Origin: Phallusia mammillata
Lineage: Eukaryota
Reading direction: 5' to 3'
Length of the DNA: 64,000 nt
Assembly: GCA_965637545.1 (NCBI GenBank)
Contig: OZ281494.1
Span: 25,482,001-25,546,000, forward strand
Shown: positions 3,301-55,000 of the stretch, piece after piece
Position numbering within the stretch: position 1 is the first letter of the stretch
How the letters are laid out: each line of letters starts with the position of its first letter
Notes under the pieces: model-generated
The model's input: only the letters and a program-made list of their open reading frames with translations
Told to the model about the DNA's origin: nothing
The model's database searches: none
Made by a program: the position numbers and the translations under genes

Positions 3301-4650
3301 TCCACTCGGATTTCGATTTCAATATTGTGCTGACTACTATTTCATGGGTAAGTCGATGGTTAAAGTAGCTATACTTAAGAACACGATTAAGGTGAAGAAC
3401 ACAACAGTGTTCTGCGAAGTCACGGCTTATAATTCCCGCTTGTGTGTGTTTGTTGTGCGATCTCGGGCGGTTTAAAACTGAATTAGAATATTAAGTGGGT
3501 GACTTAAATGCAGTGCCCGCTTTGCGTCCAAAGAAAGTCAATGCACTTGGACGTAAACACCCCGGGCCACAAAACGACCAACCATCGCCTTGGGAAACTG
3601 TCTAGAAACGGCCTGTTGTCGATGTACACAGACCAGAGCAGATAATTTCCATGGCGTGGTCAGCCTTATTTATACGGTGTCGGCAACAGTTTTTGTTTCT
3701 TTTTGCAGCTCTGCCACGAGGCCGACGATCCCGTCATGGCTGCTCAAAAGATACGACCAGGATCCACATTCGAGTCGCTTGCAAAGGTAACATTTGTTCC
3801 AAAGTTTGCGGTTGTTTATCATTGGCACTCAAGTTAGTTTTTCCCACATAATGGCAGAAGAAGATTTAAGTTAATAAGCCATCTGTCTGAGACCCAGCTT
3901 GACACACATTTCAGACGCGATTAAAAATAGATCAACTAAGAGCATGTTCGAATTAGTTATGGCGAAGCAAGGTTGCCAATTATGGGCCTGGTACTACCTG
4001 TGGCTGTCGAAGATAAGAAGAAAATGTCTCACACTCGCTTGCTCACGAGCTGTCCTCAATAAGAAGCGCTCTCCTTCCTAAAGCTCTTTTTTGTTCCTCG
4101 AGCTTACCTGCGGCTTATCGCAAACTAGCATTTATACCCGTTGAAAAAGAGAGAGAATAATTTAATTGAGCGTGCGCACGTGTTGGTCTTTTCAATGAGC
4201 CGCGGGGCGCGCTGTTTTGATAAACAAGTTCACGTGACTTGTGTGCAATACTTACAACTTGTGCCGTGTGACTCATCAAGCTAAATGTGATTACTTTGAT
4301 TTTTAGACGAAACAACTACTGTTGAAACAACAACCGAAGCAACGACAACGACGGTCAAAACAGCGAAACCTGAGGATGTTCTCTCGGACGTTATAAAGCG
4401 AATTCGTCACCACAAGAAGCCAAGCGCTGACCCAGTCAAAACAGAAGACATTGTAATCCCAGAATTGACAAACCCATTCGATATCGAGACAGAACTCTCT
4501 GAAAACAATCCGCAAGTGTTAAAGGTTGTCTCAGGACACCGAGACGTTGGTGGTGGTGAAAATTCAGCATCTTCTTTCGGAAAATCGACTTTACTACTCG
4601 CTGCAACAGTGACTGCTGGTTTCGTCATATCAAAATTCATCGTATCGTAA
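398..4650 (+). CDS. EFNA: GPI-anchored (A-type) ephrin, paralogue 1 (274 aa)
   Basis: Exons 398-507, 2355-2518, 3219-3347, 3709-3786, 4307-4650; all GT-AG, 825 nt, in frame. Signal peptide then RHVLYWNS; HVKIGEFMDILCP; KLTLKFQTISPSPLGFRF; YYFM; Thr-rich stalk; C-terminal small residues plus hydrophobic tail (GPI signal), no cytoplasmic tail. Symbol is family level only; the a/b/c/d paralogue cannot be assigned. Confidence 0.95.
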
Positions 4651-13400: not shown

Positions 13401-14725
13401 GCTCAGGTTGCGTAGATTTGATGTGGGAACTCATTTTGGCCAGTTAAAGAACAATTATTCTCACATTAGCCAATTAATTAGACGTTGTTTATTTTATCGC
13501 ACAAAGACTTTTCTGTGTGTTAACAGCAAGAGATCACTTACCCACCATTCAACGCGTCACAATTCAGTTGAAATTTGAGTGTTCGTGGGTTTTAGGCCAC
13601 TTTTCACTTCAAAAGACAGTTTTTCACCTTTCTTACTACTTGGCGTAACACGTAAAGTTTGGTTGTTAAAAAACCTGTCACGAAACCAATCCTTTCGAAA
13701 TTACTTTCCGCACTAATCGTTGTGTTTCGAAAAGTAATATTCGCACAAAAGCGGCCGCTCCTTAATTGTTTGAAAAGATGTCACGCTCTTGACACGAAAA
13801 TGTTTTTCCTTTTCAGACAAGAAGAACTTTATATTTGCGTGCGACAAACCAGAGCGAGAAAACAAGCTGACAATCAAGTTTCAAACTATCAGCCCTTCCC
13901 CGCTTGGCTTTCGTTTTCAATATTGCGAAGAATATTATTTTGTTGGTAAGATTTGTTCGTTAATCTGCCTTCATATTTCCTGTTCGGTTTTCTTGATGTA
14001 TGTGGACAAATTTTATGTCTAATCTGAACAGTGGTTAGGCTTGAAGTGGCATTTCGTGTGAATGTTAACGATTCCCAGCGCGAAAGCTGATTGTACTTTA
14101 GACGTGCAATTCTCACGAGTCCCACATGGTGGAGTAACTGTTGTAGGACAGTTGATGTGCAAAACACACATAAAACATCTGTCAAGATTTTTGAACAAAA
14201 TTTATTGTGTTGTAGAACTAACAAGAATTCTTATTTTTTCAGCTATTGACAAATCGCATAAGAACCGAGGTTGTACTAAAAACTCAACGAGGATACGAAT
14301 TGTTGTGCAATGCAAAGGTAATGTTTTGTTTTTTTCGTTTTGATTTGCTTGATTACTACGATTTTTATCACACATATAAATAGTAAGCCGCCAAATTTGG
14401 ACGCCCTAAATTTACGTGTATTTTACGAACAGACAAACCTGTGTCGACTAAAAAACCAACGACCACTACAACTTCGACTCCCAGCACCACAATAAAGGCA
14501 ACCACACAAAGAAAAAAAGCCGACCCGCGATTTGTACACCCAAAACTGCAAAGACCCACTAAAAACTCAACTGTTTTGTCGACCGGCGTTCGAAAACAGC
14601 AAAAACAAGACGAACCCGATTACGGAGGGGGCGCTTGCGGCCAAGTTGCGCCGTCATTATGGCGAATACTGACATTTTCTTTTGTCGCTTTAACAATAAC
14701 TAACATTGTACGGCAAGCGGCTTAG
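7478..14725 (+). CDS. EFNA: GPI-anchored (A-type) ephrin, paralogue 2 (257 aa)
   Basis: Exons 7478-7581, 12566-12738, 13817-13945, 14243-14317, 14433-14725; 774 nt, in frame. MNRIFVFWIALSLVFAQVTSSKRHELYWN; HVKIGEFLDVMCP; KLTIKFQTISPSPLGFRF; Thr/Lys stalk; GPI-type C-terminus (GGGACG...LWRILTFSFVALTIT). Confidence 0.95.
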
Positions 14726-23700: not shown

Positions 23701-26700
23701 GTTGGTGGTTCGTTGACGAGAGGTGCGAGTTTAAAACTTCGCTACACACGTTTTGGTGGCTAATAATAATTTTTTGCTGTGAAATTTATGTTTGCACTTT
23801 AAGCCGTGATCGCCGGCGGCGTATTTCGTGACATTAACAACAAACACAGTTAGCCCGCAGACATATAAGATTTTTGGATAACAATACTAGCCGCCATAAA
23901 TTATGAAAGGAGAAGTATTTAAACAGTCATGTCGTTGAAAAACAAAGACCAACCAATCTACTATAATACCCACTGATCCTTATTTATGTGATTAAAACGT
24001 TAGACATCGCGTGTCTGTCGATTTTGGACAGCGGGATATACATTTGCGGGCAATAAATCGTGTTGAATTTAACGACTGTCTCGTGAAGTTTAAACTTAAA
24101 TAATAACACACTTAAAGACAGTGTTGGATTTTAACAAACCACTTTACAAGAGAAATCTCCGAATAAATCATTTGGGCGAGTCTTATCCACGATCCTTAAG
24201 TGTCGCTGCCACTTGCCAATGTACACTTAAAACATGTAAGAATTGGTCAGCTTGGCCGTCGTTTAGGTAGCTGGACAAGCGAGCACTCAAACTCGATGAT
24301 TTCAACTTCAACGATTTTTTTGACTCAAGTGTGCTGGTGGGTGCGTCAGCGTGAATGTTCAAATGTTCGCGAGAAGTGATCAAGAAGCTTTCGAGTGATC
24401 TTGAAGCGTTACACTCTGTCGAATCGTGAGCTAATGATGTTTGCTGCCGTCGTAGCCGCCCAAACCATCTCATTTACGACTAGGTTCAAAGTCAAAACAG
24501 TGAACGTGTGCTGTGCACGTAGCTGTGATGATACACGATGAGATCATACATGCTCTGTAAATATATGTGTGACATAAAAAAACAGACTTTTGGCAGATTG
24601 TTCAAGTGGTCCCATTTGACCAATAAACGTCGGACAAATATTGACATCTAAGGCAATGTTGCACCATAGCATTAGTTTCACTTCTGCTCCAGCACTTTGC
24701 AGCCTTCAAACGCGAACAGCACTCAACGTAAAGAGATACTCTAACACCGCGCTGGAGGTTACAAGTCGTGTATAATGCCAACGCAACATCTGTACGACAA
24801 GCCCTCACCATGTGGTGAACCCTTGCCCATAAGCTGACAACCCAATCTTAGTTGTAAATGAACAGACAAGCACCCAGTTTATAAGAACATAAGATTCGCG
24901 GAGCCTAAAAGAGTTTGGACCCGTATCATATGACAAAAGCTACTCCTGCTTTTGTCGGTTTGTTGACGGCGTAACTATACGCGGCCGTGGGTTCACGATC
25001 GTATAATCGAACGAGCATTGTCCCCGACAGGTAGATAATCTTTAACTTTCTGTGTGCCCAGCGTCGCAGTTTAGCCTTTCCGTCTGCTTAAACAGCGTTG
25101 GAACTAGCTTAACCGAATTCGTTTATGGCGCTCAACAAACGTCACTAATTACCCATACACTTGAACAAAGATTAAAACCATGACAACAGCAGGTTCCTTC
25201 GAATCAATCACAACATTGTTGCTTGTATTTTTGACCAAACTTCCCCTTTCGGAAGCTTTTCAAAATTTGTGTGCGTTTCTCAGGTAAAACAAAGTTTTGG
25301 GAACAACCTTGGCACATTTAAACCGAACTGTGAAACTAGTAATTACGTCAGGTGTGTCAGATCACGTCACAACGTTAAACATTGGAAAATGACATAATGT
25401 GTATTCTGCGTCTACTATACAACAAACCAGTCACGTGACCCAACTACACCCACCTACACAAGAAAACTGAAATCTAAATTTAGCCCCGTTTACCATTGTT
25501 ATACCAGCCGATGACGTCAATGAACATGTCTTCCCACTCAACATACATATACACGTCCCCAAAACAAATGAGCATGTAGCCAGGGTGTCCAAAACACCTA
25601 CAATACACATCAAACGTTCTGTTGTTTTGAGCTTGTACTGTTTCTGTTGCAGACTCGGCAATGGTCAGATTTACCACATCAATGTAAAGATGAATGAGTA
25701 CATGGACATCTTTTGTCCGCAATACGACGCCGACGCCCCTGAAGCCCAAGTCCTGAAGTTTGTAATCTACAATGTCAGTTACCAGTCTTTCCAGGCGTGC
25801 ACCAAAACCAATGGTAAGAGCAAATTTACTACAAAAGACTTTTCGCTAAAGATTATTAAGGCCCACACAATATGAAATAACATTGACATTCGATGGTGTG
25901 GAGTATTGTGGTAAAGCGTCCATTGTGAATTTTATTTTTATCAAACTATGTGACTGGGCGGATTTATTGTGGCTGCTTCTGTTTGTTGTGCAGTTTCCGC
26001 AGCGACGTATATTTTGTTAGCCCCAATCTCCATACGATGCGCTGGTGTATGGCACGAAAAAGTGACAAAATGAGTTTGCCCCATGGGTGGTCTTTATCAT
26101 TCGAATATACGCCTTTGTAGTGTCGATGTGGCGTTTTAGCCCAAATTGTCGCCGCGCCCGTCGTCTTCAAACGTATGTTTGCCGTGCCCCGTGGTTTAAA
26201 ACCTTTCTTTTCATATTCACAGAAGCAAAAAAGATCTTCAACTGCAGTTCACCAATCACATCGCGCAAATTGACGACCAAGTTCCAACGTCGAAGCCCAA
26301 ACCCACTGGGTTTCGTATTCAAACCGGACTCCGATTATTATTACATCGGTAAGGAACTCCCATTGATCATTGCTTTGTTTGGCGGCCTCTGATGTATGGG
26401 TTTTTTAAAAGAAATGGGAAAATCAAGTCGTGTTTCCAACCAGCCTCACTCACCGTGGGCGACCGTTCCCCACGATACTTTCGAACACGTCAATAGTTTC
26501 CGAGCTTTTTGGAGTTAGTGTTGCGTTCCAAGCCTTGATCGTCGGCCAATCACGCGGAAGGTCTTCCTGGAAACTCGTCTGCGGAATGCTTTTATGTCAA
26601 AACGTTTCCTTAGAGATAGAATTTCTTTTTTTGCTAGGAATCGGTGCAGGGTTAAAATGTATAACCGTTTTTTTGGCCAAAAATGTCACTTGCTCCTTGC

Positions 26701-34500: not shown

Positions 34501-37500
34501 GTGACTCCAAAAAAGCATTCGGCGCCAATATTTAGCGGCAAACTACAATGCAACGTCTGTAAGATTCTCGATAACCGTTTTTTCCCAAGGTCTTATTTGA
34601 CATTTGAACACATTTGAACAAACATTTTTTTAAGGGTGATTGTGTCACAGTTCTTCTATTTACGCCCAGAATTGTCAGTTTTCATGCACGTTATCTTTCA
34701 GTGTCTATTCTCGCTCCAAATGGGATTGGGAGCTTCTATAACTGCATGAAATGCCAAACCTTAATATCGCGATAAATGCCATTTCCTTTTTATAATGTAT
34801 GCACTTTTTTCAGGTGTGCTATTTTTCATTAAGGAGCGCTCAATTAGGCAAAGTGGGTCGAACAGACGAACACGCCTCTGGATTCGACGCGCGATATTTG
34901 CACAGTTTTATCCACCGAGATCAAGCGGTCAAAAGTAAACGAAACAGTAGACAGGCGCAGCTTACGCATCAAAGGCGTGAAGAGCCCTGATGCAGGAGTC
35001 GGTAAAAGATTGGTAGTCTGCTTTCTAGCGAAATCGTGTTTTCGGGTGTCTAAAGGCATTTGCTTGACAATAAATCAAGCTGATGAAATGTGGATGGGGT
35101 AGGATAGGCGGGCACTTATTTCCACGCGTAGATTGGCAACCCGAGATTGAATCGACTTTTCTTTGCGCGAAAAGAATGAGCTTTTTTGGCTCGCCGCCAA
35201 ATTCAACAAGGCCGGTTTGCAGTTCATCAATTTAAATGCACTTCTACACAAAATTGACATTTTTCTTCGTATTTATCTGTATTGGGTTGTCAGGCACTGT
35301 TGAAGCGTGCATTGATGGGGTAAGCGCAGAATTCGACAAATTTATGCAGCAAATAACGTTTTGCCCGTAAATTGCATCAGCCAAAGATGGTAAACGTTTT
35401 CAACTTAAATTTAGGTGATTGAAATTTCTGGGGTAAATTCCGCAAAAACAAGTTTCGCTTTCAAATTCCAAACCTCACATAGGCTAATACTCGGGATATT
35501 TACCGAAAAACATTCATCATTTCCCATAAAATACGATCGTCAATCTGACTTACAATGTCAACGTTTGTTGAAGTTTGTCAAATTTAAAATCGTCACGCAT
35601 TGGTTTGAATGACGTCAATCCGGTGGAAGTTCATTCTAAACTACGTCCGTCAGCAAATACGCAAAGACAATGTACACATGTTATCAGTTTCCCAAATGAC
35701 GTCCATGTACATCGTTCAAATGATATTGACAACGCTGATGTAACGGATTTACATAATTACGAGTCCTAAACGGTATAACTTTGCATTTCCTTGTCCAGTC
35801 ATCCGAATTTTGTTCAGTCACCTATATTTGTTCACATGTCAGAACGGATTAAGTTAAGCCAAGCGTGACTAAGAACAATTTGAGGGACATAGCGGTCAGA
35901 AGGTCAGGTGTCCGAGATAAAATCGCCATTGATATGAATGAGTTAGGGTCATGGGATGTGCAAACTACGACGTGACCTTCGAGAAAGCGCCTATTCCCCG
36001 ATAAAATACTCGTCCAGTGATGGACAGCGACATGTCCACTAACCGAGTTCAAATGCTTGACCAGTTGGAGGAAAACGCCGCAACACTGAAGTGTGATGTG
36101 TTTGACGATAAACAAGTGGACAACTCAAAGACGTTTTGTTACATTTTTAGCAAAAAGGTCACTTCTACTTGGCTTACATCCATTAAGGAAGAGCAAATAT
36201 AAAATTCAGATCCAACCTCAACTTGTTTTGTTCGTGCAAAATTTTTCGGCAACTCTTTTTTTTCCTAATTGATAATAACATACTTTCAGAAACCAACTTG
36301 TCCAAACTAATTTTTTACTGTTTCCGGAAAAGACGTTTTGAGCCGCTTCATTTCATTCAGAGCATTTTAAAAGCCGGGAATACGACACTAAGCAAATAGC
36401 AACGGACAAAAGTTTCGAACGCGTCCTCTGCGTTTCGACTTGACTCCGAAAAGGGGAAACCGACTTGGTTGAAACAACGTTTCCAATTTGTCAATGAGAC
36501 ACTAATCAAATTGTTCAAAGAAAGCAAAGTGCTTCTCGAAATACCCAAGCTACCAAAATTAGGTTTAACTTATAAAAACAGTATAAATACAGCTACTGAC
36601 AAAGGTATAATGTTGGCAAATTATCGAGATGTATAAAGAACTTGGTAAATGGGGTATATGTAGCTAAAGTGCAAAAATTGTTTGGCCGCAGCACAAATGG
36701 ATTTACATTTAGAAGTATCATTCGCGAATTGCCGCGGTAAATTGCTCATGGCCGGGTAGTAATGGACTTCGTCTTAACGGCAACAATCTTTCAATCTGGG
36801 CCTTCTAAAGCGGGACAGAAATGCGCAAGCGAGTAAGACCTTCCTGGGAAGAACGTGAAATGTCAGTGAGGTTTGTCAGCTGTTATCGTGTGTTTACCTC
36901 AAAAAACAACACAACACTACTGATGGAAACCATGGGCGCATCATGCTACAACATGTTTCTGTTTGTGAACTTTGTTTAGAAACAGTGATGTGTGTTTATC
37001 AGATAAAGAAAATAATCGTCGGGCACAGTTTACCGTATACATCACGTGGGAATTCAACATCGCAAATATTTTAGTGGTATATACTCACAAAAATAGTAGT
37101 AAGTGTGACCGGGTTTGAAAACAAATCCAACGGGACTTGGGCTTCTTTTCTGAAACTTTGTTGTCAATTTCGTTTCATGCTCAGGATCAAAACATCGAAG
37201 TATTGTTCGTTCTCCTAAAAAAGTTCAAAATAAAATTTTTAATGCATTTTAGAAAATGCTCATATTGAAGTGTCTTTTCTTAGCTAGATATACAGAGGTG
37301 ACACCAGCACTGCTTTGTAGCTAATTTTCATCACCTCTGTGCCTATTAAAGGATCACAAATTTGGTCGGAAGTTGCATTTCTGTTAAATGTTTTGGGTAA
37401 TATCACGTAAGGTTTGTTTTAAAAACGGATTTATACAACCGCCGTATAAACATCGTCAACAAGTAATTCCGTCGCTACATTTACATCATTAGAGCCGGAT

Positions 37501-43839: not shown

Positions 43840-44563
43840 TGATAGAGTTTGTTTCAAAACTTTTGTAATTAATTTTATGGTTGTATGTTGTAACATACCG
43901 TATACCACAAAAGGTCATGTATATGGAAACGGCCAGCAAACCAATTCTAGTTTTCACTTTGTCAAATTTAAAATTAATTTACAGTTATTTTACTTGACTG
44001 TACTATAAATGTGTTATAGTCTACATTAGAACAACTAACTTATGGGCGTTATCGTCACATCATGTTTCCTACACTCTTTGCACTGGAATAACGATCAATT
44101 CAAATTCATTTCAAGTGTTAATCGAGTATCGTTAGCAAATTAAGCATTTGCTCGCATAGGTAAATTGAACCAATTACAAAAAAGGAAATTAAATGCATTA
44201 AGATGACATTACCATTAATCTGCTATCAGGCAATAAGGCTTCTTCGTCATTGGGTAGGCTTTCTGGTTTCGCCTGGACGTTGCGCGTTTCAAACGGAAAT
44301 GACGTTGACTCCAGCTTCGTCGACACGTTAAAGTTTCAAGGATAGTAGAACAGCAGCGAAAACCCTGATTTGTATTCAGATGAGCAAATCTGCGTGCAAT
44401 TACTACGTTTAGACGTGCAACTCGGCATGTTTCCGTTCATGCGATTCATCATAACGGGTGTTTTATTTTGACTAGCGCACAGCGGCGTAGGTCAATTTTT
44501 GCAAGAGAAATTATTAGTTGGACTACTTTTCATATTCTTGTGGAGGGTAAAACAACAATCGAT

Positions 44564-47500
44564 ATGATACAGGCAGGTGAGCTTGTGACCGTTTTAAGCT
44601 CCACCGCTACCGTCGGTTTTGGAAGCTTTGGAAAGGTCCTCGACTGTTATCATCGCTCCTACGGCCGCGTTGCTGTCAAATGTATCCAAATAAATGGAAC
44701 TGCACAGAGTTTAAGTGAAATAGAAAACAAGTGAGTTGAATCGTTTAACATTTTGTCCCTCAAAATTTATAAAATACCATTATTATGTCTTATTTCGGCT
44801 GATTGAACCCAAACAGTATACGTCAATTGCGAACAATAATGATGCCACCAATTAGCCTCTTAAACAATCTATATCACCTAACAGTGTATTGTTGATTGCC
44901 AATTATGAAACTGAAAAATAGCTCGGAAATCAAACGTTTAAACATTCTTTCGTAACTTTTTTTATCAACCTTTTACAAGCGTTTTTATCTTAGAATGGTG
45001 TTATAACCCTATATACAATGAAAATAGAAATTACTTTTTCACAGTCTTACCAACGGTTTGTCGGAGTTGAAGAAGATTAACCATGGGAGTATTGTTCAAC
45101 TTTATGCTGTAACAGCGTGGTCCTGCAACTTTGGGATTGTTACAGAATTCATGGAGGGTGGAAGTCTCAGCGATTTTCTGTCGGAGAGCAATCTTTCCGT
45201 TATCCCTTGGTGTTTAAGGTTATGTATAGCACATGAAATAACAAAAGCGCTATCATTTCTGCACCTGATCGACCCAAAAAAGCCAATAGTCCACGGAAAT
45301 CTCAAACCACAAAATGTTTTGCTGACTGCCGATTTGCGTGCAAAAGTGGCTGACGTAGGGCTGGCTCACGTGATGACGTCATCCGGCGCGTCGAATTCTG
45401 TTCACAACGGTTCGACAAACCACAGCTCTGTCTTGTACTCCGCACCTGAGTTGTTAGATGATATCACTATGGAATACACGACTGCAATGGATATTTACAG
45501 GTATATTAGTATACATAAGAAAGGCATGGGTTTTCATAAATTTGAATGTCAACATAAAAAGCAAATGTCTTGCAGCTTTGCGATGGTTGTTTATGAAATT
45601 CTTGCAAGAAACCGTGTTTTTCAAAAAGTATCAGGCAATCTTGCACTGGTTATTTCCACGATTCTAAGCAAGGGACAAAGGCCAGACCAACAACCACTGC
45701 GATCTATTCGAGCAAAGATGAAACAAGGTCATCAGGATTTGATCATATTTGACGTTTTGTGCAAAACCATGCTGGAATGTTGGGACCAAAATCCAGCATA
45801 TAGGCCTCACATAAATACTGGTAATTATAATACCTTACTGTACAACAACGTTTACTTGACCTGTTTAAGTAATAATGCCAGAGAGTTTAACATATGGTGA
45901 ATATAATGATTACATATGTTGGATATAATGAGGAATGTAATGATCACAAATGTAAACCTCTATACAACAACTTTAATCTCAAATAATCGCCCCAGTCGAT
46001 CGACCAGAAAGAGTAATTCGCATGCAAAGTTACTAAAACCTTTGTAAGATGTTGGTATTACGCTGCACCACACTATTTCGACAGTTGGAAAAGAAATCGG
46101 TTGCCATGTTTCTTCAATAAGCGAAACGGAGATGCTACAGGCCCGATTGTGTGCACTCAACCGTCGCGATCGCAATAGAAACTGGCACTATGACCAAGTT
46201 GAACATGTTCCCCTTTCTGAATGTTGGCAGAACGAATTGGCTTTGAAAAGCCCGCTTTCACCAACCACCAGTGAAGTCGGTATGTGTATAATTACAAAGT
46301 ACTGGTATGCTTCCAGTAGTATTTTCGTTTCTAGAACATGACCTCTTAAAGCAGTGTTCCCACTTTGTAGTTGCATACTGCTGGCAAAATACTTTTTGTC
46401 GGTGCAATTGTTTTTACATTGTAAGTAAAAACTTGAAACTTAATGTGCTCTGTGGGGCCGCTTTCCTAAGAAATGAAATCAACGAGGAGGCCAGGCATTA
46501 TTTACAATTTAAACATGTATAGTAGTTGCACTCTTTAAAAGCACTTTTCGCTGTACCCTTTAAAACTCTTTGAAAAAAACAAACACTGCCTTGATACTGG
46601 TGGGTTCTCAATTTAAACTCAATAACTACTTTTTTTTAAAAAAAAACACGCTGGTTTCGATACCGTCGCTTCATTAATGCACACAAAAACAAGAATACAA
46701 GAAACACTCACCAAAAGAGTTTGATACAGTTTAAAATAACATCGATATTCCAACGTATTTCAAGCAACAACAAAGTAGAAACGTACCACAACTCGCCCGA
46801 AATTGAATAACTGCAATTCGAATTATCAATTTTACTGAATAACGCCTCTTTGACGTCATAGACGGTCCCTGTGTTGTAAGAAAAAGGTGCGTGCAAATGG
46901 CGGCAAACGAAGATTTTATGAACCAATATTAGTATTTATTTCAAAATGGATGTTTCACGCAATACACTTTTTAACAAAATAATCTCACTCAAATATAATT
47001 ATGTTTAGATTGGCAGTATGTGGACCCGCAACCTGTACAAAAAACATCACCTGTAAAAACGGTCGAAGAACTTTCAATCATATTTTTTGTGACCAACGAA
47101 GTTCAACAGTGTGATGTTTTCCAGTTTCTTCCCTCTTCGAAAACATTTGTTGAATTTCCGGTCAGTAGGTTAATACAAAAATCGACATGTTCGTATAGTT
47201 TAGTACAGGGGTGCGCAACCTGCGGCCGTACGGCCGCATGCGGCCGAAGAGACGAGTTTGTGCGGCCGTGAGCACGTTTATTAAATTATGTGTAACTGGC
47301 GGCCGTAACGTAAATAAGACTCTATTGCTAAATATTTTAATTTTTAAATTGCTCTAAACAGTTTTTGTGATACTAAAAAGAGTATTACCAGCCTAGAAGC
47401 CACATACGTCGGCCTTTTTATACGCCTATTGTGTGCAAACAATGCGAACAAAACAGGTGCTACAAACATCACAATGTAGTCTATGCCATCACAAACACTT

Positions 47501-49211
47501 AAGGCTGTTCAGCTTAATCTGTGGACCAGGTTAGAAAATTGGGATTTTTGGGCGTGATTGCATGGTGTATATATGATATAAACTAATTTCCTTCAATCAG
47601 TAATTTTAAAACAAAAACAAGCAGGTAAATGGCGGCCGTTAGTGAAATAAGAATCCGCGATGCGGCCGTCGTAGCAAAAAGGTTGTGCATCCCTGGTTTA
47701 GTAGAATGACATAAATGCCAAAAGACAATTTATTAAAGCAACATTTCAACATTCATCAAGTACATGTTGCTACCTTATTAGAAACTATTTTGGGACTGGA
47801 ACGACTCTACGGCCGTTGTTCTGCAAAACTCGTTGTACGTTATTGGCTCCAATTCAGTATTTAGCTTGAAACTGAGCGGAAGTGCTACTTCTTCATGGGA
47901 AGCAAAATCGCCAATGCTGCATACAAGGACACACACTGCTGCAGCAGTCATCAAAGGTGCATTATTGATGGACACAAAAATTCAGTAAAAAAAACACAAG
48001 AAGAGATCAAAAGCACAAATTCGAGAGCACTTTACACTTTGCATACTTTAACAGCCTATGTAAACTCAAACGGCGTATTCACATTATTAGCCTCCAAACA
48101 TTTTGATCATAGCACACCAATGCAAAATCAGCAGGGGGCAGTGTTCACATAGAATTTCCATTGCAGGTGAAATATATGTGTTTGGGGGCATTGACGAAAA
48201 CCGGAAAGTTCTGTCGTCGATTGAATGCTACAATCCATCGAGCAACACATGGAGAAACAGAGGAAAGTTAAAGAAGCGTAGATTTGGACACAACGCTATT
48301 GTCTATAAAGGTAGCCTACTTCGTCAGACCTTATTAATTAGTATTCACACTATAATGTTTGGCTTATCATTAGGAAAAGCATATTGCATTGGAGGAGCAA
48401 ATGCAAACGTCGAATGTTACGATCCCAAGGACAAAACCACTACAATCCTCACCAGGACACCAAATAGAAACGGATTTGCAACTGTTATATGCAACGGAGT
48501 CATTTATGATATCGGTAGGTCTGCATATTTACCACCTTGTTAATTGTAATGTGACAAAATGCAAGCGTCATCAGGCCTTATTCATCAAATACTGACAATC
48601 AAAGTTAAGCATTATGCTTATTTTTGAACCCATGTGTTTTATTTATAACTTTACTTAGTTTTACATGTATGTGCGTCAACCTGCACACCTAACATAATAT
48701 TCATATGGCGAAACATATACTTTTCAAAGATTATAGGCCAAAGTCAAATTTACAATATTTTTTGCAGGCCGAAAAGCTAAAACTCAAACTCGAGGTAAGC
48801 ATGTGAGGGTAATTGCGTGTAAAATCCTGCATTATTGCCTATTAGCAGAAAAGATATGAAAACATCTTTATCTGCAGGTGGTTCCATCAAAGGTCAGGCA
48901 ATCCACTTTAATATTGATTGCTACGACATTTCATCGGACTTGTGGAAAAGAGCCGATGACCACAAAACTGACCGATCGCAAGGTTGCGCATGCGCAATAG
49001 GTGACAAGGTGTACCTTGTTGGAGGGTAAGTTTCCATTGAGCACTAAATAATGTTTATGCAGTTTTATCCCCAAATTCGGTTTGCCTTGTCAACAGGTTT
49101 AGCAAAGTGACATCAACGCAGTTCATCGAGGAATACGACACAGTTTTAAAGCGCTGGAGAACGGTGACTACCATGAACCACGGGTTTATCAAACATGTCT
49201 GTGTTTCGTAA
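44564..49211 (+). CDS. RIPK-like (TKL group) probable pseudokinase fused to six-bladed Kelch propeller (657 aa)
   Basis: Exons 44564-44730, 45045-45500, 45576-45820, 46049-46279, 47009-47160, 47782-47956, 48167-48310, 48374-48514, 48878-49025, 49097-49211; all GT-AG, 1974 nt, single open frame. Kinase motifs GFGSFG, VAVK, HGNLKPQN, DVG, YSAPE, DIYSF, CWDQNPAYRP. Kelch motifs LYVIGS, IYVFGG..ECYNP..W, AYCIGG, IYDIGG, VYLVGG..EYD..W. The two linker exons (46049-46279, 47009-47160) are the least certain. Confidence 0.82.
47206..47695 (+). mobile_element. hAT MITE (490 bp), copy A, in intron 5 of the kinase-Kelch gene
   Basis: Ends CAGGGGTGCGCAACC / GGTTGTGCATCCCTG; repeated subterminal GCGGCCG; perfect 8-bp TSD GTTTAGTA; near-identical to 49827-50321 in inverted orientation. 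Confidence 0.95.
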
Positions 49212-49460
49212 AGATGTAGTACCAATGCTAAAATATAGTGTACAAATCAGTTCAGTGTTATTTGTTTACCTTTTTTCGTAAATCCGCAATTAAATCAAAA
49301 TGAGCAAATTAGATGTTGCAATTTCTCGCAGTACGGCTGTGTAGACTGGCGTATAGACTTTTGTGCTTACATCTACCGTGGAAAAGATGAGTAGGACCAC
49401 GTGAGCGGCCATAGGTTGACGTAGCACATGTAGCTGCAGCATTTATACCAGTATGTAGGC

Positions 49461-49768
49461 CAGTGGTTCTCAACTGGTAGTCCATGGACCACTACTGGTC
49501 CATGATGACTTTGTGGCTGGTCCATAGGACGCCCATTAACTTAAGGGATAAACTGGAGATGATTGTATATCACATATTGAAAGAGTGTCAAAATGTTAGC
49601 TGTTATAATAATTGTATCTCATTTGTTGAAAATCGGGTTTAATCAATTATGTTTCAAGCCCAAATAGTTTTGTATGCGTACTTCGGTATTGCTCAAAAAT
49701 AAAATGGTCCACGATATTATTTTTACTCGGGCGGTGGTCTATGGCCTGAAACGAGTTGAGAACCACAG
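49461..49768. mobile_element. hAT MITE (about 308 bp) downstream of the kinase-Kelch gene
   Basis: Ends CAGTGGTTCTCAACT / AGTTGAGAACCACAG; subterminal GGTCCAT repeats; TSD not intact (left ATGTAGGC; right end looks partly deleted). Confidence 0.65.
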
Positions 49769-50844: not shown

Positions 50845-51375
50845 ATGGCTGCTTCAACAACATTTAACTGGCCATGGCAATATGACTTTCCACCATTCTT
50901 TACAATCCAAAAGAATGCGGACACAAAAGCAAAACAAATTGAAGCTTGGTGTACTTTGGTTTTGGAGTATCATCAACACAACAAGTTATTGAAGTTGAGG
51001 GTTGCAGATGCATTGGCATCCCCACTTTTTTCTAACAAAGCAATCGAACGAAAACTCCCGAAAGAGGGTGTTATGGAAGTACTGGAAAGTTTATGCAAAA
51101 AAGGAAATGTTCAGTGGGATGACAAAAGCAAAACTTCCTGTGTGATATATTGGAAAACGATCGAACAATGGGCAGACATTATTTACAGTTGGGCATCAAA
51201 AACTGGTTCCTTAAACACTGTCTGCACACTCCATGAATTAACACAGGGACCACATACAACATCTGAACCTTTCCATGGATTGGATGATTGGTTGTTAATT
51301 AAAGCACTTTCTACATTGCAATCAAGAGGAAAGGCAGAGTTAATTGGTGAAGAAGGAGTGAAGTTTTTTGCTTGA
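50845..51375 (+). CDS. VPS25: ESCRT-II subunit VPS25 (176 aa), intronless
   Basis: Single ORF with the diagnostic N-terminus FNWPWQYDFPPFFT, then AWCTLVL, PLFSN, LHEL, FHGLD and C-terminal GVKFF. Confidence 0.97.
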   Translation: MAASTTFNWPWQYDFPPFFTIQKNADTKAKQIEAWCTLVLEYHQHNKLLKLRVADALASPLFSNKAIERKLPKEGVMEVLESLCKKGNVQWDDKSKTSCVIYWKTIEQWADIIYSWASKTGSLNTVCTLHELTQGPHTTSEPFHGLDDWLLIKALSTLQSRGKAELIGEEGVKFFA

Positions 51376-52032
51376 TAGGTTTTCCTCTTATACTTGGCTT
51401 TAACCATGAATGTTATCAAACCAAGTACACATCTATAGTTTGATTTTTGGTTTTTGGTAGTCCGTGTCATATTTAATTGCAATTTTGAAAATTGTAATAA
51501 TAACCATGATGTATGTTTGTTTAGTTTTAAAAGTTACCACTGAAAATGTAATTGAAATATCACAAAAATAAAATGTTTAGTGCAGGGACGCACAACACAA
51601 TTGATATCACTGGTTTCCCATTAATGTTGTCATGTGACATTTTTTAAGTGATTTCTTAACTGCACAATGCAAAGCGTAGGGATGGGCAATAATAAGTTGG
51701 ATGCTATTTCAAAACTATTCTATGTTAAATTGAAAATACTGAATCCTAGTTGATGGGGCAAACTGGCCCAGTTTGCTTGTCTTAAATTTGAGTAAAGTGC
51801 AATTTGAGAATGAAATGTTTAACTTAAACTTGTGCAGTTTTGAATTTAATTTGAAATTTTGTGTCTAAATTGTATTTAGAGATAAAAGAAGTAATATATT
51901 TTAACATAATATGCATTAACTAACTTTTTAAATGTGTATCAACGTTAATTCTTTCAAGAAAACAGATGTTTTACTTTACCCTTTTCTTCCTACTAGCTTC
52001 GGTTTGATAAATGCTTGGCATACACATGTAAT

Positions 52033-55000
52033 ATGGCCAAAGTAGTGATTTTGGATGCGGGATCACAGTATGGAAAAGTCATTGACAGAAAAGTAAGAGA
52101 ACTGAGTATTCATTCTGAACTACTGCCACTGCAGACCCCAGCAAGTCAACTCAAAGATGCAGGTTTTGAATGCATCATTATTTCTGGAGGCCCAGCTTCT
52201 GTGCATTTATCAGAGGCCATAGCTGTTGATCAGGAAATTTTTAATCTTCATGTTCCTGTGTTGGGAATTTGTTATGGTATGCAACTTATGAATCAGCATT
52301 TTGGCGGAGTTGTTGAAACATCACCTGTAAGGGAAGACGGACAATTTGATACAGTAGTTGAGCGAAGTTGTGCACTTTTTCGAGATCTAGAGTCTGATAA
52401 TCAATCTGTTTTGTTAACCCATGGTGACTCTGTAAAGACTGTTGCCCCTGGATTTACGACTGTTGCCAAATCAGGTAAACAATGCTTTTGTGGTCATTGT
52501 AAAACTGGGCTGCTTTACATGCTACATGTTGTGGTGTTTTTAACGACTGTAAAAAGTTTTGACCAACAAGTTGTGTCCCCTAAGTCAACAAGACTTGATT
52601 TGCCTTTAAGTTTTTGTGCTTGCTGGAACATTTTAGTGTTTTGGATTGCAAGCCTGGATAACTCTTACATGCAGTAATAAATATATTTTTGAAGTTTCAT
52701 AATCTTTAAAAATTGTATCAATTTATGATGACTGGCACAATAACTGCACCTAGACTGGTATTATAATGTGAAATGTGACACACAGCATTTGAAAGCTAAG
52801 CAACAGTTAAAACTTATTTTTCTACCAGATGTGCATTGTTTGTTTTTCAGGTAATCTTATCACAGCAATTGCAAAGGAAAGTAGAAGATTGTATGGACTT
52901 CAGTTTCATCCTGAAGTTGATCTGACTGACAATGGAAAACAAATGTTAAAAACCTTTCTTTACAACATATCTGGTGAGCATATATAGCTTGCATTGCATA
53001 CTGGAGTTGAGTTTAGTTTATTTCGCTTGGTGACAGAAAACATGGAGACAAAATTGCAATAAACATTTACCAAACTGGAAATAGCTGCAAAATGTTAAAG
53101 AGCATGAAAAAGGCAGAATGGTTGATGAGACCTAAATGTGCTTCAGCTACACTTCTTTTTTAAGTGAAATAAACCATTTCTTCTTAGGTTTGAAGCCAAC
53201 ATACACTGTGGGAAGTCGTGAAGAAGCTTGTTTAAATTTAATCAAATCCACAGTTGGTACTTCCAAAGTTTTGGTGCTTGTGAGTGGCGGCGTAGATTCT
53301 TCTGTCTTGACAGCTTTGTGTTACAAAGCACTAAAACCAACCCAGGTAATGCAGGTAGTTGTAACATAAATAAACCACAATATTTCTATTTCATATTTTG
53401 TTTTTAAGTAACATTATTCAAAGAAATTATGTCATGTTGTCTTTTAGGTTATAGCATTGCATGTGGACAATGGTTTCATGCGAAAAAATGAATCACAAAA
53501 TGTAGTAAAGGCATTAAAAAGTCGTGGAATTGATGTTAAACTTGTAAATGCTGGAAACATATTTTACAACAGCACTACAACTCTGAATGTCAAGCATCCG
53601 AAAGGGGCAAAACGAAAGGTAGAGCATGCATGTATTGTTTCTATTGTCCATCATTAAGCACATCTTTGTCCAAAGTTTCTGCCTTTTTAATGCTTGAGTC
53701 AATTTTCTAGATTGTTAGCCGAGTTTTATGTCAAACATTAGATCCAGAAGAAAAACGAAAAATCATTGGCGATACTTTTATGAATGTTGTTGATTTTGAA
53801 GCACAAGAACTTGAGATTTCAATAGATGATTGTTATCTGGCACAAGGTAACCCCTACACATATACATTTTATTGCTTGAACTAGTTTCTGTTCTAAGTAA
53901 TCTAAAGTTACTAACATTCATTTCAAACCCTTTTTTGCTTCAAGGAACCCTCAGACCTGATTTGATTGAATCAGCTTCCAGTCTTGTCAGTACAAATGCT
54001 GATGCAATAAAAACACACCACAATGATACTGAACTTGTCCGAGCTCTCAGAGCAAAAGGTCGTATCCTGGAGCCCTTAAAGGACTTTCACAAGGACGAAG
54101 TGAGAAAATTAGGAAAATTGCTAGGGCTGCCCAATGAAGTCCTGATGAGGTAAAACACCTTTGGGTTTTACATAAATTTGTGAAAAGTTAGGTTTCATTT
54201 TTACTTTCTAATCTGTTGCCCTGCAGTTACTATTAAACTCTTGTTTTTGGAGATATTCACCCATCTTTTTAAATTATTTCATCTAGAAGTTTTGTATCAT
54301 TCTTTACCGGTGTGAAATTAAATTGCAAAAACAAAATTAATGGTGTTTTAATTATAGACACCCATTTCCTGGGCCAGGTTTGGCAATTCGTGTCATCTGT
54401 GCTGAGGAAATTTTTCAATGTGCTGACTTTTCCCATACCCAAACAATGCTGCGAATTATTGCTAGTTACAGCAACTCAATCAGCAAGCCACATGCTTTGT
54501 TACAAGTTAGTTATATTCTAATTGCGATAAAAATCATGTTATGTACAACTGTGTAATAATTTCAGAAAATCCATGCAGTAATGTCTACGGATCAAGAGCG
54601 AGAAAAACTGAGAATTTATACAGAAAGATTTCCAATGAAAGCTACGTTGCTGCCAATTAAAACAGTTGGTGTGCAAGTGAGTCTGATTTTATGGTCTTTG
54701 TTTGTTCAACTAGTATGTGCTTTACAACATATTATCAAAACATTTTTAGCTCTTCCAGCAGTCTTTATTATATTACGTTTTTTACCACCGCTTTTTTGTG
54801 TGTTTCGCTGCCCTTTTTTGCTTTATACTAACTTTGTGTTTTCAATTTTTGTCATTATCCTGATGAAGGTGTCTCATATGCATTGCTGGGATTCAGCCAG
54901 TTCTTACCGGTTCTATAGAACCGTCTCACGAAATTTTATGAAATCAGCGAACCGGTTAGCATTACTGGTTACTGTCAATGGACTTTTTGTACAGAACCGA

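What the first reader, a model, noticed from the sequence alone, without database searches (positions are those of the whole stretch)
44564..49211. RIPK-like kinase domain fused to a six-bladed Kelch propeller with no BTB domain
Seen: ten GT-AG exons splice into one 1974-nt frame with compatible phases at every junction. The product is a TKL/RIPK-like kinase, a linker of about 90 aa, then five clear Kelch blades plus a degenerate first blade, ending in a strand (HVCVS) that could close the propeller. Established: RIPK-family kinases usually carry death, RHIM, CARD or ankyrin modules, and animal Kelch propellers usually sit behind BTB/BACK as Cullin-3 adaptors. I do not know this fusion from vertebrates, but did not search. 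Inference: a lineage-specific scaffold in which Kelch recruits a ligand and the kinase fold acts as a switch, possibly in innate immunity, cell death or the cytoskeleton.
Basis: partly seen in the sequence, partly recalled or inferred. Interest (0 to 1): 0.85.

Follow-up and report, generated by a model that had tools for sequence, protein, structure and literature searches.

The report
Sea-squirt RIPK-like kinase–Kelch gene
This is a real sea-squirt gene that joins an immune-type (RIPK-like) kinase to a six-bladed Kelch propeller; other sea squirts carry predicted but unstudied relatives, and this species' copy has lost the aspartate that does the catalysis, so it probably works as a scaffold rather than an enzyme.

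Summary
The spliced frame is real. Two details change:
- The only RNA contig on the gene joins 45820 to 46085, not 46049.
- A 27-nt microexon (48768-48794) matches a 24-nt microexon in the Ciona ortholog.

The best model has 11 exons and 654 aa. It is the ortholog of Ciona intestinalis LOC100182307 ("uncharacterized protein"). Identity is 43%, every intron falls at the same position and phase, an ephrin gene lies upstream in both, and kinase and Kelch trees both place them as sisters (99/95).

The kinase is closest to RIPK1/RIPK2. The propeller is KLHL-type with six blades closed by the C-terminal strand, as modelled on the Ciona ortholog.

Kinase+Kelch relatives occur in Ciona, Clavelina and Phallusia and on unlabelled metagenome contigs. 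I found no paper on them.

The family is non-RD (HGD), with an invariant catalytic Asp. The window copy has HGN, the αC Glu replaced by Gly, and a faster-evolving kinase domain. All conserved Kelch positions are kept, so it is a probable pseudokinase scaffold.

Any role in immunity or cell death is inferred only. Moderate interest: an undescribed variant of RIPK-like kinases, not a new kind of system.

The parts
44564..44730 (+). Exon 1: start codon, Gly-rich loop (GFGSFG) and VAVK lysine (K39, 44678-44680)
   Evidence: First in-frame ATG after a stop. Pkinase N-lobe hit. Donor GT in phase 2, at the same aligned position as the Ciona intron.
45045..45500 (+). Exon 2: kinase core. It holds the αC position (G60 where the family has Glu), the catalytic loop HGN (45292-45300; N141 at 45298-45300), DVG (45352-45360) and APE.
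   Evidence: Pfam PK_Tyr_Ser-Thr 4.9e-24. Equals Ciona exons 2+3 (180+276 nt). Motifs. No sequence differences in two DNA runs.
45576..45820 (+). Exon 3: kinase C-lobe, 245 nt
   Evidence: Same length (245 nt) and phase as Ciona exon 4. Its donor at 45820 is used in the RNA contig of run X4.
46085..46279 (+). Exon 4: helical linker.
   Evidence: An RNA contig joins 45820 to 46085, GT..AG. 195 nt against 198 nt in Ciona. No Pfam family. Helices in the ortholog's model.
47009..47160 (+). Exon 5: end of linker and the three strands of degenerate blade 1
   Evidence: Ends in phase 0 as in Ciona. Blade mapping.
47161..47781 (.). Intron 5, holding a very high-copy MITE-like repeat (about 47206-47703)
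   Evidence: Contig word depth is 45,000-95,000 against about 350 in the flanks. The imperfect terminal inverted repeat was read.
47782..47956 (+). Exon 6: blade 2 and the start of blade 3
   Evidence: 175 nt against 172 nt in Ciona, phase 1. Weak Kelch_1 hit.
48167..48310 (+). Exon 7: blade 3 (IYVFGG ... W), 144 nt, phase 1-1
   Evidence: Identical length to the Ciona exon (144 nt). Kelch_1 1.2e-12.
48374..48514 (+). Exon 8: blade 4, 141 nt, phase 1-1
   Evidence: Identical length to the Ciona exon (141 nt). Kelch hits.
48768..48794 (+).
   Evidence: Strong AG/GT sites and phase 1-1. Same place as the 24-nt microexon of the Ciona model. In the ortholog's model it lengthens a β-hairpin of blade 5. 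No RNA evidence here.
48878..49025 (+). Exon 10: rest of blade 5 and the start of blade 6, 148 nt
   Evidence: Identical length to the Ciona exon (148 nt). Kelch_1 7.9e-6.
49097..49211 (+). Exon 11: blade 6, the closing strand FIKHVCV (49185-49205) and stop TAA (49209-49211)
   Evidence: Acceptor AG, phase 2 as in Ciona. The C-terminal strand completes blade 1 in the ortholog's model.
37057..37224 (-). Ephrin exon of the upstream, divergently oriented neighbour (synteny marker)
   Evidence: Pfam Ephrin 1.4e-9. An Ephrin gene lies upstream on the opposite strand of the Ciona ortholog as well.

Best explanation
One protein-coding gene (11 exons, about 654 aa) on the + strand. It is the ortholog of Ciona intestinalis LOC100182307 and belongs to an ascidian family of cytoplasmic proteins. 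These join an N-terminal RIPK1/2-like, non-RD (HGD) kinase domain, through a short helical linker, to a KLHL-type six-bladed Kelch propeller closed by its C-terminal strand. Shown: the gene structure, the orthology, the domain identities, and the loss of the catalytic Asp in this species. Inferred mechanism: the propeller is the partner- or ligand-binding module. It takes the place that death, CARD, RHIM or ankyrin modules hold in vertebrate RIP kinases, and the kinase domain is the signalling part. In this species the kinase keeps its fold and its nucleotide-binding residues (Gly loop, VAVK Lys, N146, D159). It has lost the catalytic base (HGD to HGN) and the conserved αC Glu. It most likely acts as a pseudokinase: a scaffold or allosteric partner whose output depends on what the propeller binds, and perhaps on pairing with active paralogs, rather than on phosphotransfer. 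The pathway (innate immunity or cell death) is the weakest, purely associative step.
For: Gene and orthology:
- The ORF and splice sites check out.
- An RNA contig links the last kinase exon to the linker exon.
- All ten window introns fall at the same aligned position and phase as introns of the exactly solved Ciona gene, with exon sizes 245/144/141/148 identical.
- An ephrin gene lies upstream in both species.
- Window and P0003 are sisters at 99/95 in both the kinase tree and the Kelch tree.

One polypeptide:
- 33 collected homologs carry both domains.
- These include intronless single ORFs such as L002 10001-12004, which translates exactly to P0114.

Domain identity:
- The kinase piece is closest to RIPK2/3/4/1.
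- The family profile is closest to RIPK1 (4e-47) and RIPK2 (1.8e-45).
- The ortholog's propeller is closest to KLHL20/KEAP1 by sequence and to KLHL12 by fold (TM 0.84).
- The AF2 model has pLDDT 84.7 and 24 propeller strands.

Pseudokinase:
- In 28 family members, H146, D148, K150, N153 and D166-F167-G168 are invariant and E67 is 93% conserved.
- The window has N, V and G at D148, F167 and E67.
- It keeps 8 of 8 conserved Kelch positions.
- HGN occurs in only 2 of about 140 related kinase domains.
- Tajima relative-rate counts show more window-unique than Ciona-unique changes in the kinase with all 9 outgroups (p<0.05 in 7), and no such excess in the Kelch domain.
- Branch lengths are 0.79 vs 0.36 for the kinase but 0.34 vs 0.96 for the Kelch domain.
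- D138N is the standard kinase-dead RIPK1 allele, and it keeps scaffold functions (PMC13079931).

Context:
- Sister kinases in Clavelina carry TIR+Ras/Roc and GTPase+Macro modules.
- Canonical RIPK1 is reported absent from tunicates (PMC12119088).
Against: - Transcript evidence in this species is one 152-nt contig at depth 3. No RNA covers the linker-Kelch junctions or the microexon.
- Overall kinase identity to Ciona (45.2%) equals Kelch identity (45.5%), so the rate asymmetry is modest and rests on one species pair.
- DVG alone is not inactivating, since active RIPK1 has DLG at that motif (alignment).
- A Glu lies three residues after the lost αC Glu and might substitute.
- Some Asn-for-Asp kinases keep weak activity (my knowledge).
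- The structure was modelled for the Ciona ortholog, not for the window protein. Its inter-domain geometry is uncertain (pTM 0.55).
- No partner, ligand, expression pattern or phenotype is known for any family member.
Confidence: 0.6

Rival explanations
1. It is still an active, atypical kinase. The Asn in the catalytic loop, together with the retained Lys, Asn146 and Asp159, supports slow or specialised phosphotransfer, such as autophosphorylation on clustering. The Kelch propeller recruits the substrate.
For: The Gly loop, VAVK Lys, N146, the D of DVG and APE are all kept. RIPK1 is active with DLG in place of DFG. A Glu lies 3 residues after the lost αC Glu. Overall kinase-domain conservation is as high as that of the propeller.
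Against: The catalytic Asp is invariant in 28 of 28 family members and changed only here. The same D-to-N change is the standard kinase-dead allele of RIPK1 (PMC13079931). Several other family-conserved kinase positions are also changed (E67, G84, QHT in the activation segment). The kinase domain shows lineage-specific acceleration.
Confidence: 0.2
2. It is a gene on its way to becoming a pseudogene. Catalysis is lost, expression is very low, and the intact frame is a leftover.
For: Available RNA runs of the species hold almost none of it (shares 0.00-0.02, one contig). The kinase domain is accelerated.
Against: The 1965-nt frame is intact over 11 exons with all canonical splice sites. All 8 conserved Kelch positions and 35 of 44 conserved kinase positions are kept. 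The Kelch branch is shorter than in Ciona. At least one correctly spliced transcript fragment exists. The RNA runs are small (16-34 million letters of contigs).
Confidence: 0.1
3. There are two transcription units: a kinase-only gene (exons 1-4) and a separate Kelch gene (exons 5-11) that happen to be in compatible phase.
For: No RNA read spans 46279/47009 or 47160/47782. Kinase-only relatives exist (P0165, P0171).
Against: Exon 5 has no start codon context and begins in phase 1. Intron positions and phases across the junction are conserved with the single Ciona gene model. Homologs from three other ascidian genera and intronless metagenome ORFs encode both domains in one chain. Blade 1 needs the C-terminal strand and the linker-encoded strands to fold as one propeller.
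Confidence: 0.05
4. It is a Cullin-3 substrate adaptor of the KLHL type that has picked up a kinase domain.
For: The propeller is closest to KLHL12/KLHL20/KEAP1. NCBI names some Ciona paralogs 'kelch-like protein 12/20/26'.
Against: No BTB or BACK domain is found in the window exons, the ortholog or its linker, even at E up to 1. Without BTB there is no known Cullin-3 docking site.
Confidence: 0.03

Closest known systems
Ciona intestinalis LOC100182307 (P0003, 644 aa, 'uncharacterized protein')
   Same: Ortholog. 43% identity over 632 aa, the same domain order, all introns shared in position and phase including the microexon, an ephrin gene upstream, and sister placement in both domain trees.
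   Different: Ciona keeps HGD, DFG and the αC Glu, so it is predicted active. It has one extra intron in the kinase. Its Kelch domain evolved faster and its kinase slower than the window's.
Vertebrate RIPK1 / RIPK2 (TKL group, RIPK family)
   Same: Best solved-structure matches to the kinase domain (family profile 4e-47 and 1.8e-45). N-terminal kinase followed by a C-terminal protein-interaction module. Non-RD catalytic loop (RIPK1 HKD). RIPK1 also lacks the DFG Phe (DLG).
   Different: There is no death domain, RHIM or CARD. A Kelch propeller takes their place. Only about 25-30% identity, and no orthology shown. JAK/TYK2 and RIPK4 score only slightly lower. The window copy lacks the catalytic Asp.
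KLHL-family Kelch domains (KLHL12, KLHL20, KLHL3, KEAP1)
   Same: Six-bladed propeller with C-terminal strand closure. Ortholog model TM 0.84 to KLHL12, 27% identity. Sequence E about 1e-31 to KLHL20/KEAP1.
   Different: No BTB or BACK, so it is not a Cullin-3 adaptor. Blade 1 is degenerate. Blade 5 carries a microexon-encoded hairpin extension.
Pseudokinase members of immune TKL families (IRAK2 with Asn and IRAK3 with Ser at the catalytic Asp; MLKL) and the engineered RIPK1 D138N
   Same: Loss of the catalytic Asp with the fold retained. Scaffold or allosteric roles beside active paralogs. RIPK1 D138N keeps scaffold functions (PMC13079931). The IRAK and MLKL details are from my own knowledge, not tested here.
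   Different: Different subfamilies and different partner modules. No partner is known here.
Kinase+Kelch proteins outside ascidians (ESM-Atlas clusters mostly from Porifera; Entamoeba histolytica and Leishmania kinases with Kelch)
   Same: Same Pfam combination of Pkinase/PK_Tyr_Ser-Thr with Kelch_1 and no BTB (PMC2939887; PMC1266030).
   Different: Common descent with the ascidian family is not shown. The Atlas hits are feature matches without alignment. None is functionally characterised.

Membership tests
Ascidian kinase-Kelch family (orthogroup of Ciona LOC100182307) | N-terminal TKL kinase plus C-terminal Kelch propeller in one chain, homologous over the full length | tested here: met
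   43% identity over 632 of 654 aa to P0003. phmmer of the C-terminal part against P0003 gives 1.2e-79. Sisters at 99/95 in both domain trees.
Ascidian kinase-Kelch family (orthogroup of Ciona LOC100182307) | Shared gene structure and neighbourhood | tested here: met
   10 of 10 introns are shared in position and phase. Exon lengths 245/144/141/148 are identical. An ephrin gene lies upstream on the opposite strand in both.
Ascidian kinase-Kelch family (orthogroup of Ciona LOC100182307) | Family-invariant catalytic residues (HGD Asp, DFG, αC Glu) | tested here: not met
   The window has HGN, DVG and Gly at the αC Glu position. All three are invariant or at least 93% conserved in 28 members. It is a member by descent but a catalytic outlier.
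RIPK family (RIPK1-5) | Kinase domain closest to RIP kinases among known kinases | tested here: met
   RIPK2/3/4/1 are the top PDB sequence hits. The family profile gives RIPK1 164 bits and RIPK2 158 bits, ahead of JAK (156), TYK2, RIPK4, RIPK3 and IRAK4. The margin is small.
RIPK family (RIPK1-5) | Characteristic C-terminal module (death domain + RHIM, CARD, RHIM, or ankyrin repeats) | tested here: not met
   Pfam finds only kinase and Kelch families in the exon pieces and in the orthologs. PMC12119088 reports no kinase+RHIM+DD protein in tunicates.
RIPK family (RIPK1-5) | Placement inside the RIPK1-5 clade in a tree with vertebrate RIPKs, ANKK1, DSTYK, MLKL and IRAKs | not tested
   No tool gave me vertebrate RIPK sequences as usable records, so they could not go into my trees, which hold only database hits of the query.
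BTB-BACK-Kelch (KLHL) Cullin-3 adaptors | Six-bladed Kelch propeller of KLHL type | tested here: met
   Tested on the ortholog: TM 0.84 to KLHL12, 24 strands, C-terminal closure. The window keeps all conserved Kelch positions.
BTB-BACK-Kelch (KLHL) Cullin-3 adaptors | N-terminal BTB and BACK domains | tested here: not met
   No BTB or BACK hit in any exon piece, in P0003, or in linkers scanned at E up to 1.
Pseudokinases | Loss of at least one of the catalytic residues: VAIK Lys, HRD Asp, DFG Asp | tested here: met
   The HRD-position Asp is Asn141 (codon AAT, 45298-45300). The sequence is identical in the contigs of two DNA runs.
Pseudokinases | Absence of phosphotransfer activity | not testable with these tools
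   This needs a biochemical assay of the recombinant domain.
Non-RD kinases (innate-immunity-associated class) | No Arg before the catalytic Asp (HxD with x not R) | tested here: met
   This holds for the family: HGD in 83 of about 140 related domains and in at least 96% of kinase-Kelch members. The window has HGN, so the class applies to its ancestry, not to a working catalytic loop.

The most novel reading that the evidence does not exclude
Ascidians, which lack a canonical RIPK1, may have rebuilt RIP-kinase-type signalling around a non-RD kinase domain shuffled onto alternative recognition modules (Kelch propeller here; TIR-Roc, GTPase-Macro, SH3, Sushi and TPR in sister genes). On this reading the kinase-Kelch proteins would be cytosolic sensors or adaptors of innate immunity or cell death. 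The window's catalytically dead ortholog would be a naturally evolved 'D138N-like' scaffold, decoy or regulator of its active paralogs.
Probability: 0.2. Interest if true: 0.65.

Novelty: new variant of a known kind. Interest (0 to 1): 0.4.

Why it matters
RIP kinases are central switches between survival, inflammation and cell death in vertebrates. Their pre-vertebrate history is poorly resolved, and tunicates, the closest relatives of vertebrates, are reported to lack a canonical RIPK1.

A conserved ascidian family puts a RIPK1/2-like non-RD kinase in front of a KLHL-type propeller. It shows one way the partner-binding module of such kinases was exchanged, and it gives a tractable candidate in Ciona, where knock-down, reporters and pull-downs are routine.

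The window's ortholog adds a natural experiment. It carries the same Asp-to-Asn change that is used to make kinase-dead RIPK1, has a conserved propeller and has a faster-evolving kinase domain. This makes it a clean case for asking what a RIP-like kinase fold does without catalysis.

The limits are plain. All function is inferred, expression here is barely detectable, and the proteins are already present, unnamed, in public databases.

Tried and rejected
1. My first hand-built 11-exon model had the last acceptor off by one base and broke the frame. I corrected it.

2. RNA support was thin. Two run searches found only DNA-like runs holding the locus, plus small RNA contig sets with shares of 0.00-0.02. 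The single read-laying run gave one junction.

3. The spliced window protein has no reference. I did not type it into the homology, structure or atlas tools. I analysed it only in scripts and used the Ciona ortholog P0003 as proxy for AlphaFold2 and Foldseek. The search for homologous proteins could not be queried with a window piece long enough to reach 650-aa relatives, so I went through the search of protein representatives first.

4. The window's own protein is not in the protein collections. The best hit is 48-51% identical.

5. The organism behind the intronless ENA/JGI kinase-Kelch ORFs stayed unknown. No names came back, and there is no DNA similarity to the window. The Atlas hint of Porifera was not confirmed by any named sponge protein in the word-indexed searches.

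6. I looked for BTB/BACK remnants in the linker and found none.

7. I looked for a paralog inside the window and found none.

8. Literature searches for kinase-Kelch fusions in animals, a Ciona kinome with Kelch, or LOC100182307 gave nothing.

9. The bacterial promoter/terminator scan is irrelevant for this eukaryote.

10. I first counted DVG as inactivating. I dropped that after seeing that active RIPK1 has DLG.

11. The FastTree of 149 kinase domains left it unresolved whether the fusion arose once. Starred branches force at least 11 gains or losses, but many 'Kelch-less' rows are fragments or isoforms.

Full report
**Observation**

- The ten exons have AG/GT borders and compatible phases.
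- They give 1974 nt, or 657 codons, ending at TAA 49209-49211.
- The ATG at 44564 is the first in-frame ATG after a stop.
- Pfam on the exon pieces finds a protein kinase in exons 1-3 (PK_Tyr_Ser-Thr 4.9e-24).
- Pfam also finds Kelch motifs in the later exons (Kelch_1 1.2e-12 and 7.9e-6). No BTB or BACK domain appears.
- The window contains no N.

**Transcript evidence**

Two run searches found only two DNA-like runs that hold the whole locus, introns included. They also found small RNA contig sets of the same species with almost none of it.

I laid four runs on 44300-49500. This gave a single informative RNA contig (X4, 152 nt, depth 3). It joins 45820 to 46085 with GT..AG ends.
- It confirms the donor of the last kinase exon and shows that this exon continues into the linker exon.
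- No RNA covers the other junctions.
- The two DNA runs show no differences from the window, so the unusual catalytic codons are not assembly errors. These runs may come from the assembled individual.
- Intron 5 and the region from about 49456 are very high-copy repeats.

**Relatives and gene structure**

The spliced protein has no reference, so I searched with the open frame that runs through exons 2-3.
- The best cluster representative is P0003 (644 aa, 48% identical). NCBI calls it "uncharacterized protein LOC100182307 [Ciona intestinalis]".
- Of the 150 nearest kinase representatives, 17 also match the window's C-terminal half.
- After further searches I held 33 proteins with both domains.
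- Named members come only from ascidians: Ciona intestinalis (several loci, auto-named "kelch-like protein 12/20/26", "NS1A-binding protein-like"), Clavelina lepadiformis and Phallusia mammillata.
- Many more come from unlabelled ENA/JGI metagenome contigs.
- One of those contigs (L002) encodes the 667-aa kinase-Kelch protein as a single uninterrupted ORF in a tandem array. In this family the two domains are therefore one chain without any splicing assumption.

I fetched the Ciona locus and solved its exon chain exactly against P0003.
- Ciona has 12 exons of 188/180/276/245/198/92/172/144/141/24/148/124 nt.
- The window gene has 167/456/245/195/152/175/144/141/27/148/115 nt.
- The 456-nt window exon equals the Ciona exons of 180 and 276 nt together.
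- In the pairwise alignment every window intron lies at the same column and phase as a Ciona intron.
- Introns have no DNA similarity between the two species, so this is conservation of structure, not of sequence.
- Upstream of both genes, on the opposite strand, lies an ephrin gene.
- Careful IQ-TREE trees of the kinase domain (38 rows) and of the Kelch domain (15 rows) both place the window protein as sister of P0003, with support 99/95.

I conclude that this is one gene, the ortholog of LOC100182307. The best model is 11 exons and 654 aa, or 645 aa if the microexon is skipped.

**What the domains are**

Kinase:
- The window's kinase piece matches RIPK2, RIPK3, RIPK4 and RIPK1 best among solved structures (about 1e-17).
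- A profile of 16 family kinase domains ranks RIPK1 (4e-47) and RIPK2 (1.8e-45) first. JAK/TYK2, RIPK4, RIPK3, CTR1, plant RLKs and IRAK4 follow closely.
- "RIPK-like TKL kinase" is therefore fair. Membership of the RIPK1-5 clade was not tested with a tree, and the defining C-terminal modules are absent.

Propeller:
- The Kelch part of the ortholog is closest to KLHL20/KEAP1 by sequence (about 1e-31).
- An AlphaFold2 model of the ortholog, built on a 28-sequence family alignment, has mean pLDDT 84.7.
- The model shows a kinase, three linker helices and 24 β-strands arranged 3+4+4+4+4+4+1.
- That is six blades, with the C-terminal strand completing blade 1.
- Foldseek gives TM 0.84 to the KLHL12 Kelch domain.
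- Mapped to the window, the closing strand is FIKHVCV (49185-49205).
- The microexon lengthens a hairpin in blade 5.
- No BTB/BACK remnant is detectable in the linkers.

**The catalytic state**

- In the family alignment the catalytic loop H-G-D-x-K-x-x-N and the DFG motif are invariant, and the αC Glu is 93% conserved.
- The family is non-RD (HGD), as are most of its nearest kinase relatives (83 of about 140).
- The window protein keeps 43 of 52 family-conserved positions.
- All nine losses are in the kinase domain: the catalytic Asp (N141), the DFG Phe (V160), the αC Glu (G60), G84, R123, Y134 and the QHT triplet of the activation segment (positions without a window residue are in P0003 numbering).
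- All eight conserved Kelch positions are kept.
- DVG by itself should not be over-read, because active RIPK1 has DLG (alignment).
- A Glu three residues after G60 might partly replace the αC Glu.
- The Asp-to-Asn change at the catalytic base is the same change used to make kinase-dead RIPK1 (D138N). That allele retains scaffold functions (PMC13079931).

Relative-rate counts agree with a domain-specific shift.
- With each of nine outgroups the window lineage has more unique changes than the Ciona lineage in the kinase (for example 45 vs 25 and 38 vs 13; p<0.05 in seven).
- There is no such excess in the Kelch domain, where two outgroups show Ciona faster.
- Terminal branches for window vs Ciona are 0.79 vs 0.36 in the kinase tree and 0.34 vs 0.96 in the Kelch tree.
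- Overall identity is nevertheless equal in the two domains (45%). The fold is maintained, which fits a working pseudokinase better than decay.

**Mechanism (inferred)**

The propeller binds a partner or ligand. The kinase domain is the signalling part. In most family members it is probably a non-RD kinase activated by clustering. In this species it is probably a nucleotide-binding but catalytically dead scaffold that may pair with active paralogs.

The link to innate immunity or cell death is associative.
- Non-RD kinases are tied to immune signalling (PMC8463890).
- The nearest characterised kinases are RIPK1/2.
- Sister kinases in Clavelina carry TIR+Ras/Roc and GTPase+Macro.
- Canonical RIPK1 is reported missing from tunicates (PMC12119088).
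- Earlier unchecked notes of this scan mention other RIPK-like fusions in the same sea-squirt genome. I did not test them.

**Comparison and novelty**

- The architecture is not unique to this lineage. ESM-Atlas lists several Pkinase+Kelch_1 clusters whose recorded members are mostly sponges.
- The best AlphaFold-DB cluster hit is a 699-aa kinase-propeller protein.
- Kelch-bearing kinases were noted in Entamoeba and Leishmania kinomes (PMC2939887, PMC1266030).
- Whether these share a fusion event with the ascidian family is unresolved.
- I found no paper describing kinase-Kelch proteins in animals or LOC100182307. The library searched holds open-access papers only.
- My verdict: a real gene, an undescribed but database-visible variant of RIPK-like kinases, with a species-specific pseudokinase state.
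- Interest is moderate.

Noticed in passing
window 3182-3472 (+), 13774-14019 (+), 26066-26389 (+), 37057-37224 (-): Four ephrin receptor-binding-domain exons form a tandem ephrin gene cluster (Pfam Ephrin 1.1e-13 and 1.4e-9 for the two tested). The last one is head-to-head with the kinase-Kelch gene, as in Ciona.
   Followed up: partly
window 47161-47781 (about 47206-47703) and from about 49456: Very high-copy repeats: contig word depth of 45,000-95,000 against about 350 in the flanks. The intron-5 element is GCGGCCG-rich with imperfect terminal inverted repeats (CAGGGGTGCGCAACCT / AGGTTGTGCATCCCTG), so it looks like a MITE. RNA contig sets also hold pieces of it.
   Followed up: partly
window 50845-51375 (+) and 52015-52677 (+): An intronless ESCRT-II/VPS25 ORF (Pfam 7.9e-52) and the first exon of a GMP-synthase-type glutamine amidotransferase (5.5e-27) lie downstream. 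The Ciona ortholog instead has a fucosyltransferase-like gene downstream, so synteny holds on the upstream side only.
   Followed up: partly
window 45501-45575 and 48311-48373: Introns 2 (75 nt) and 7 (63 nt) are multiples of three without stop codons. Retaining them would keep the frame, adding 25 aa in the kinase C-lobe or 21 aa between blades 3 and 4. There is no evidence that this is used.
   Followed up: no
proteins P0156, P0267, P0075, P0250 (Clavelina lepadiformis): Kinases of the same non-RD RIPK-like clade are fused to TIR+Ras/Roc, to Arf/Ras GTPase+Macro, to SH3 and to Sushi domains. This suggests wide module shuffling on this kinase domain in ascidians.
   Followed up: partly
L002 (ENA ERZ25067590, contig ctg30074_29x_l) 2952-3785, 10001-12004, 15769-16233: An intronless 667-aa kinase-Kelch ORF is flanked by Kelch-bearing fragments. 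At least eight collected relatives map to this 881-kb contig, six of them carrying both domains, so this is a tandem array in an unidentified eukaryote from a metagenome.
   Followed up: partly
protein P0024 (1658 aa, unlabelled): This is the only other collected relative with HGN in the catalytic loop. It keeps DFG and sits on a long branch, so it looks like an independent loss of the catalytic Asp.
   Followed up: no
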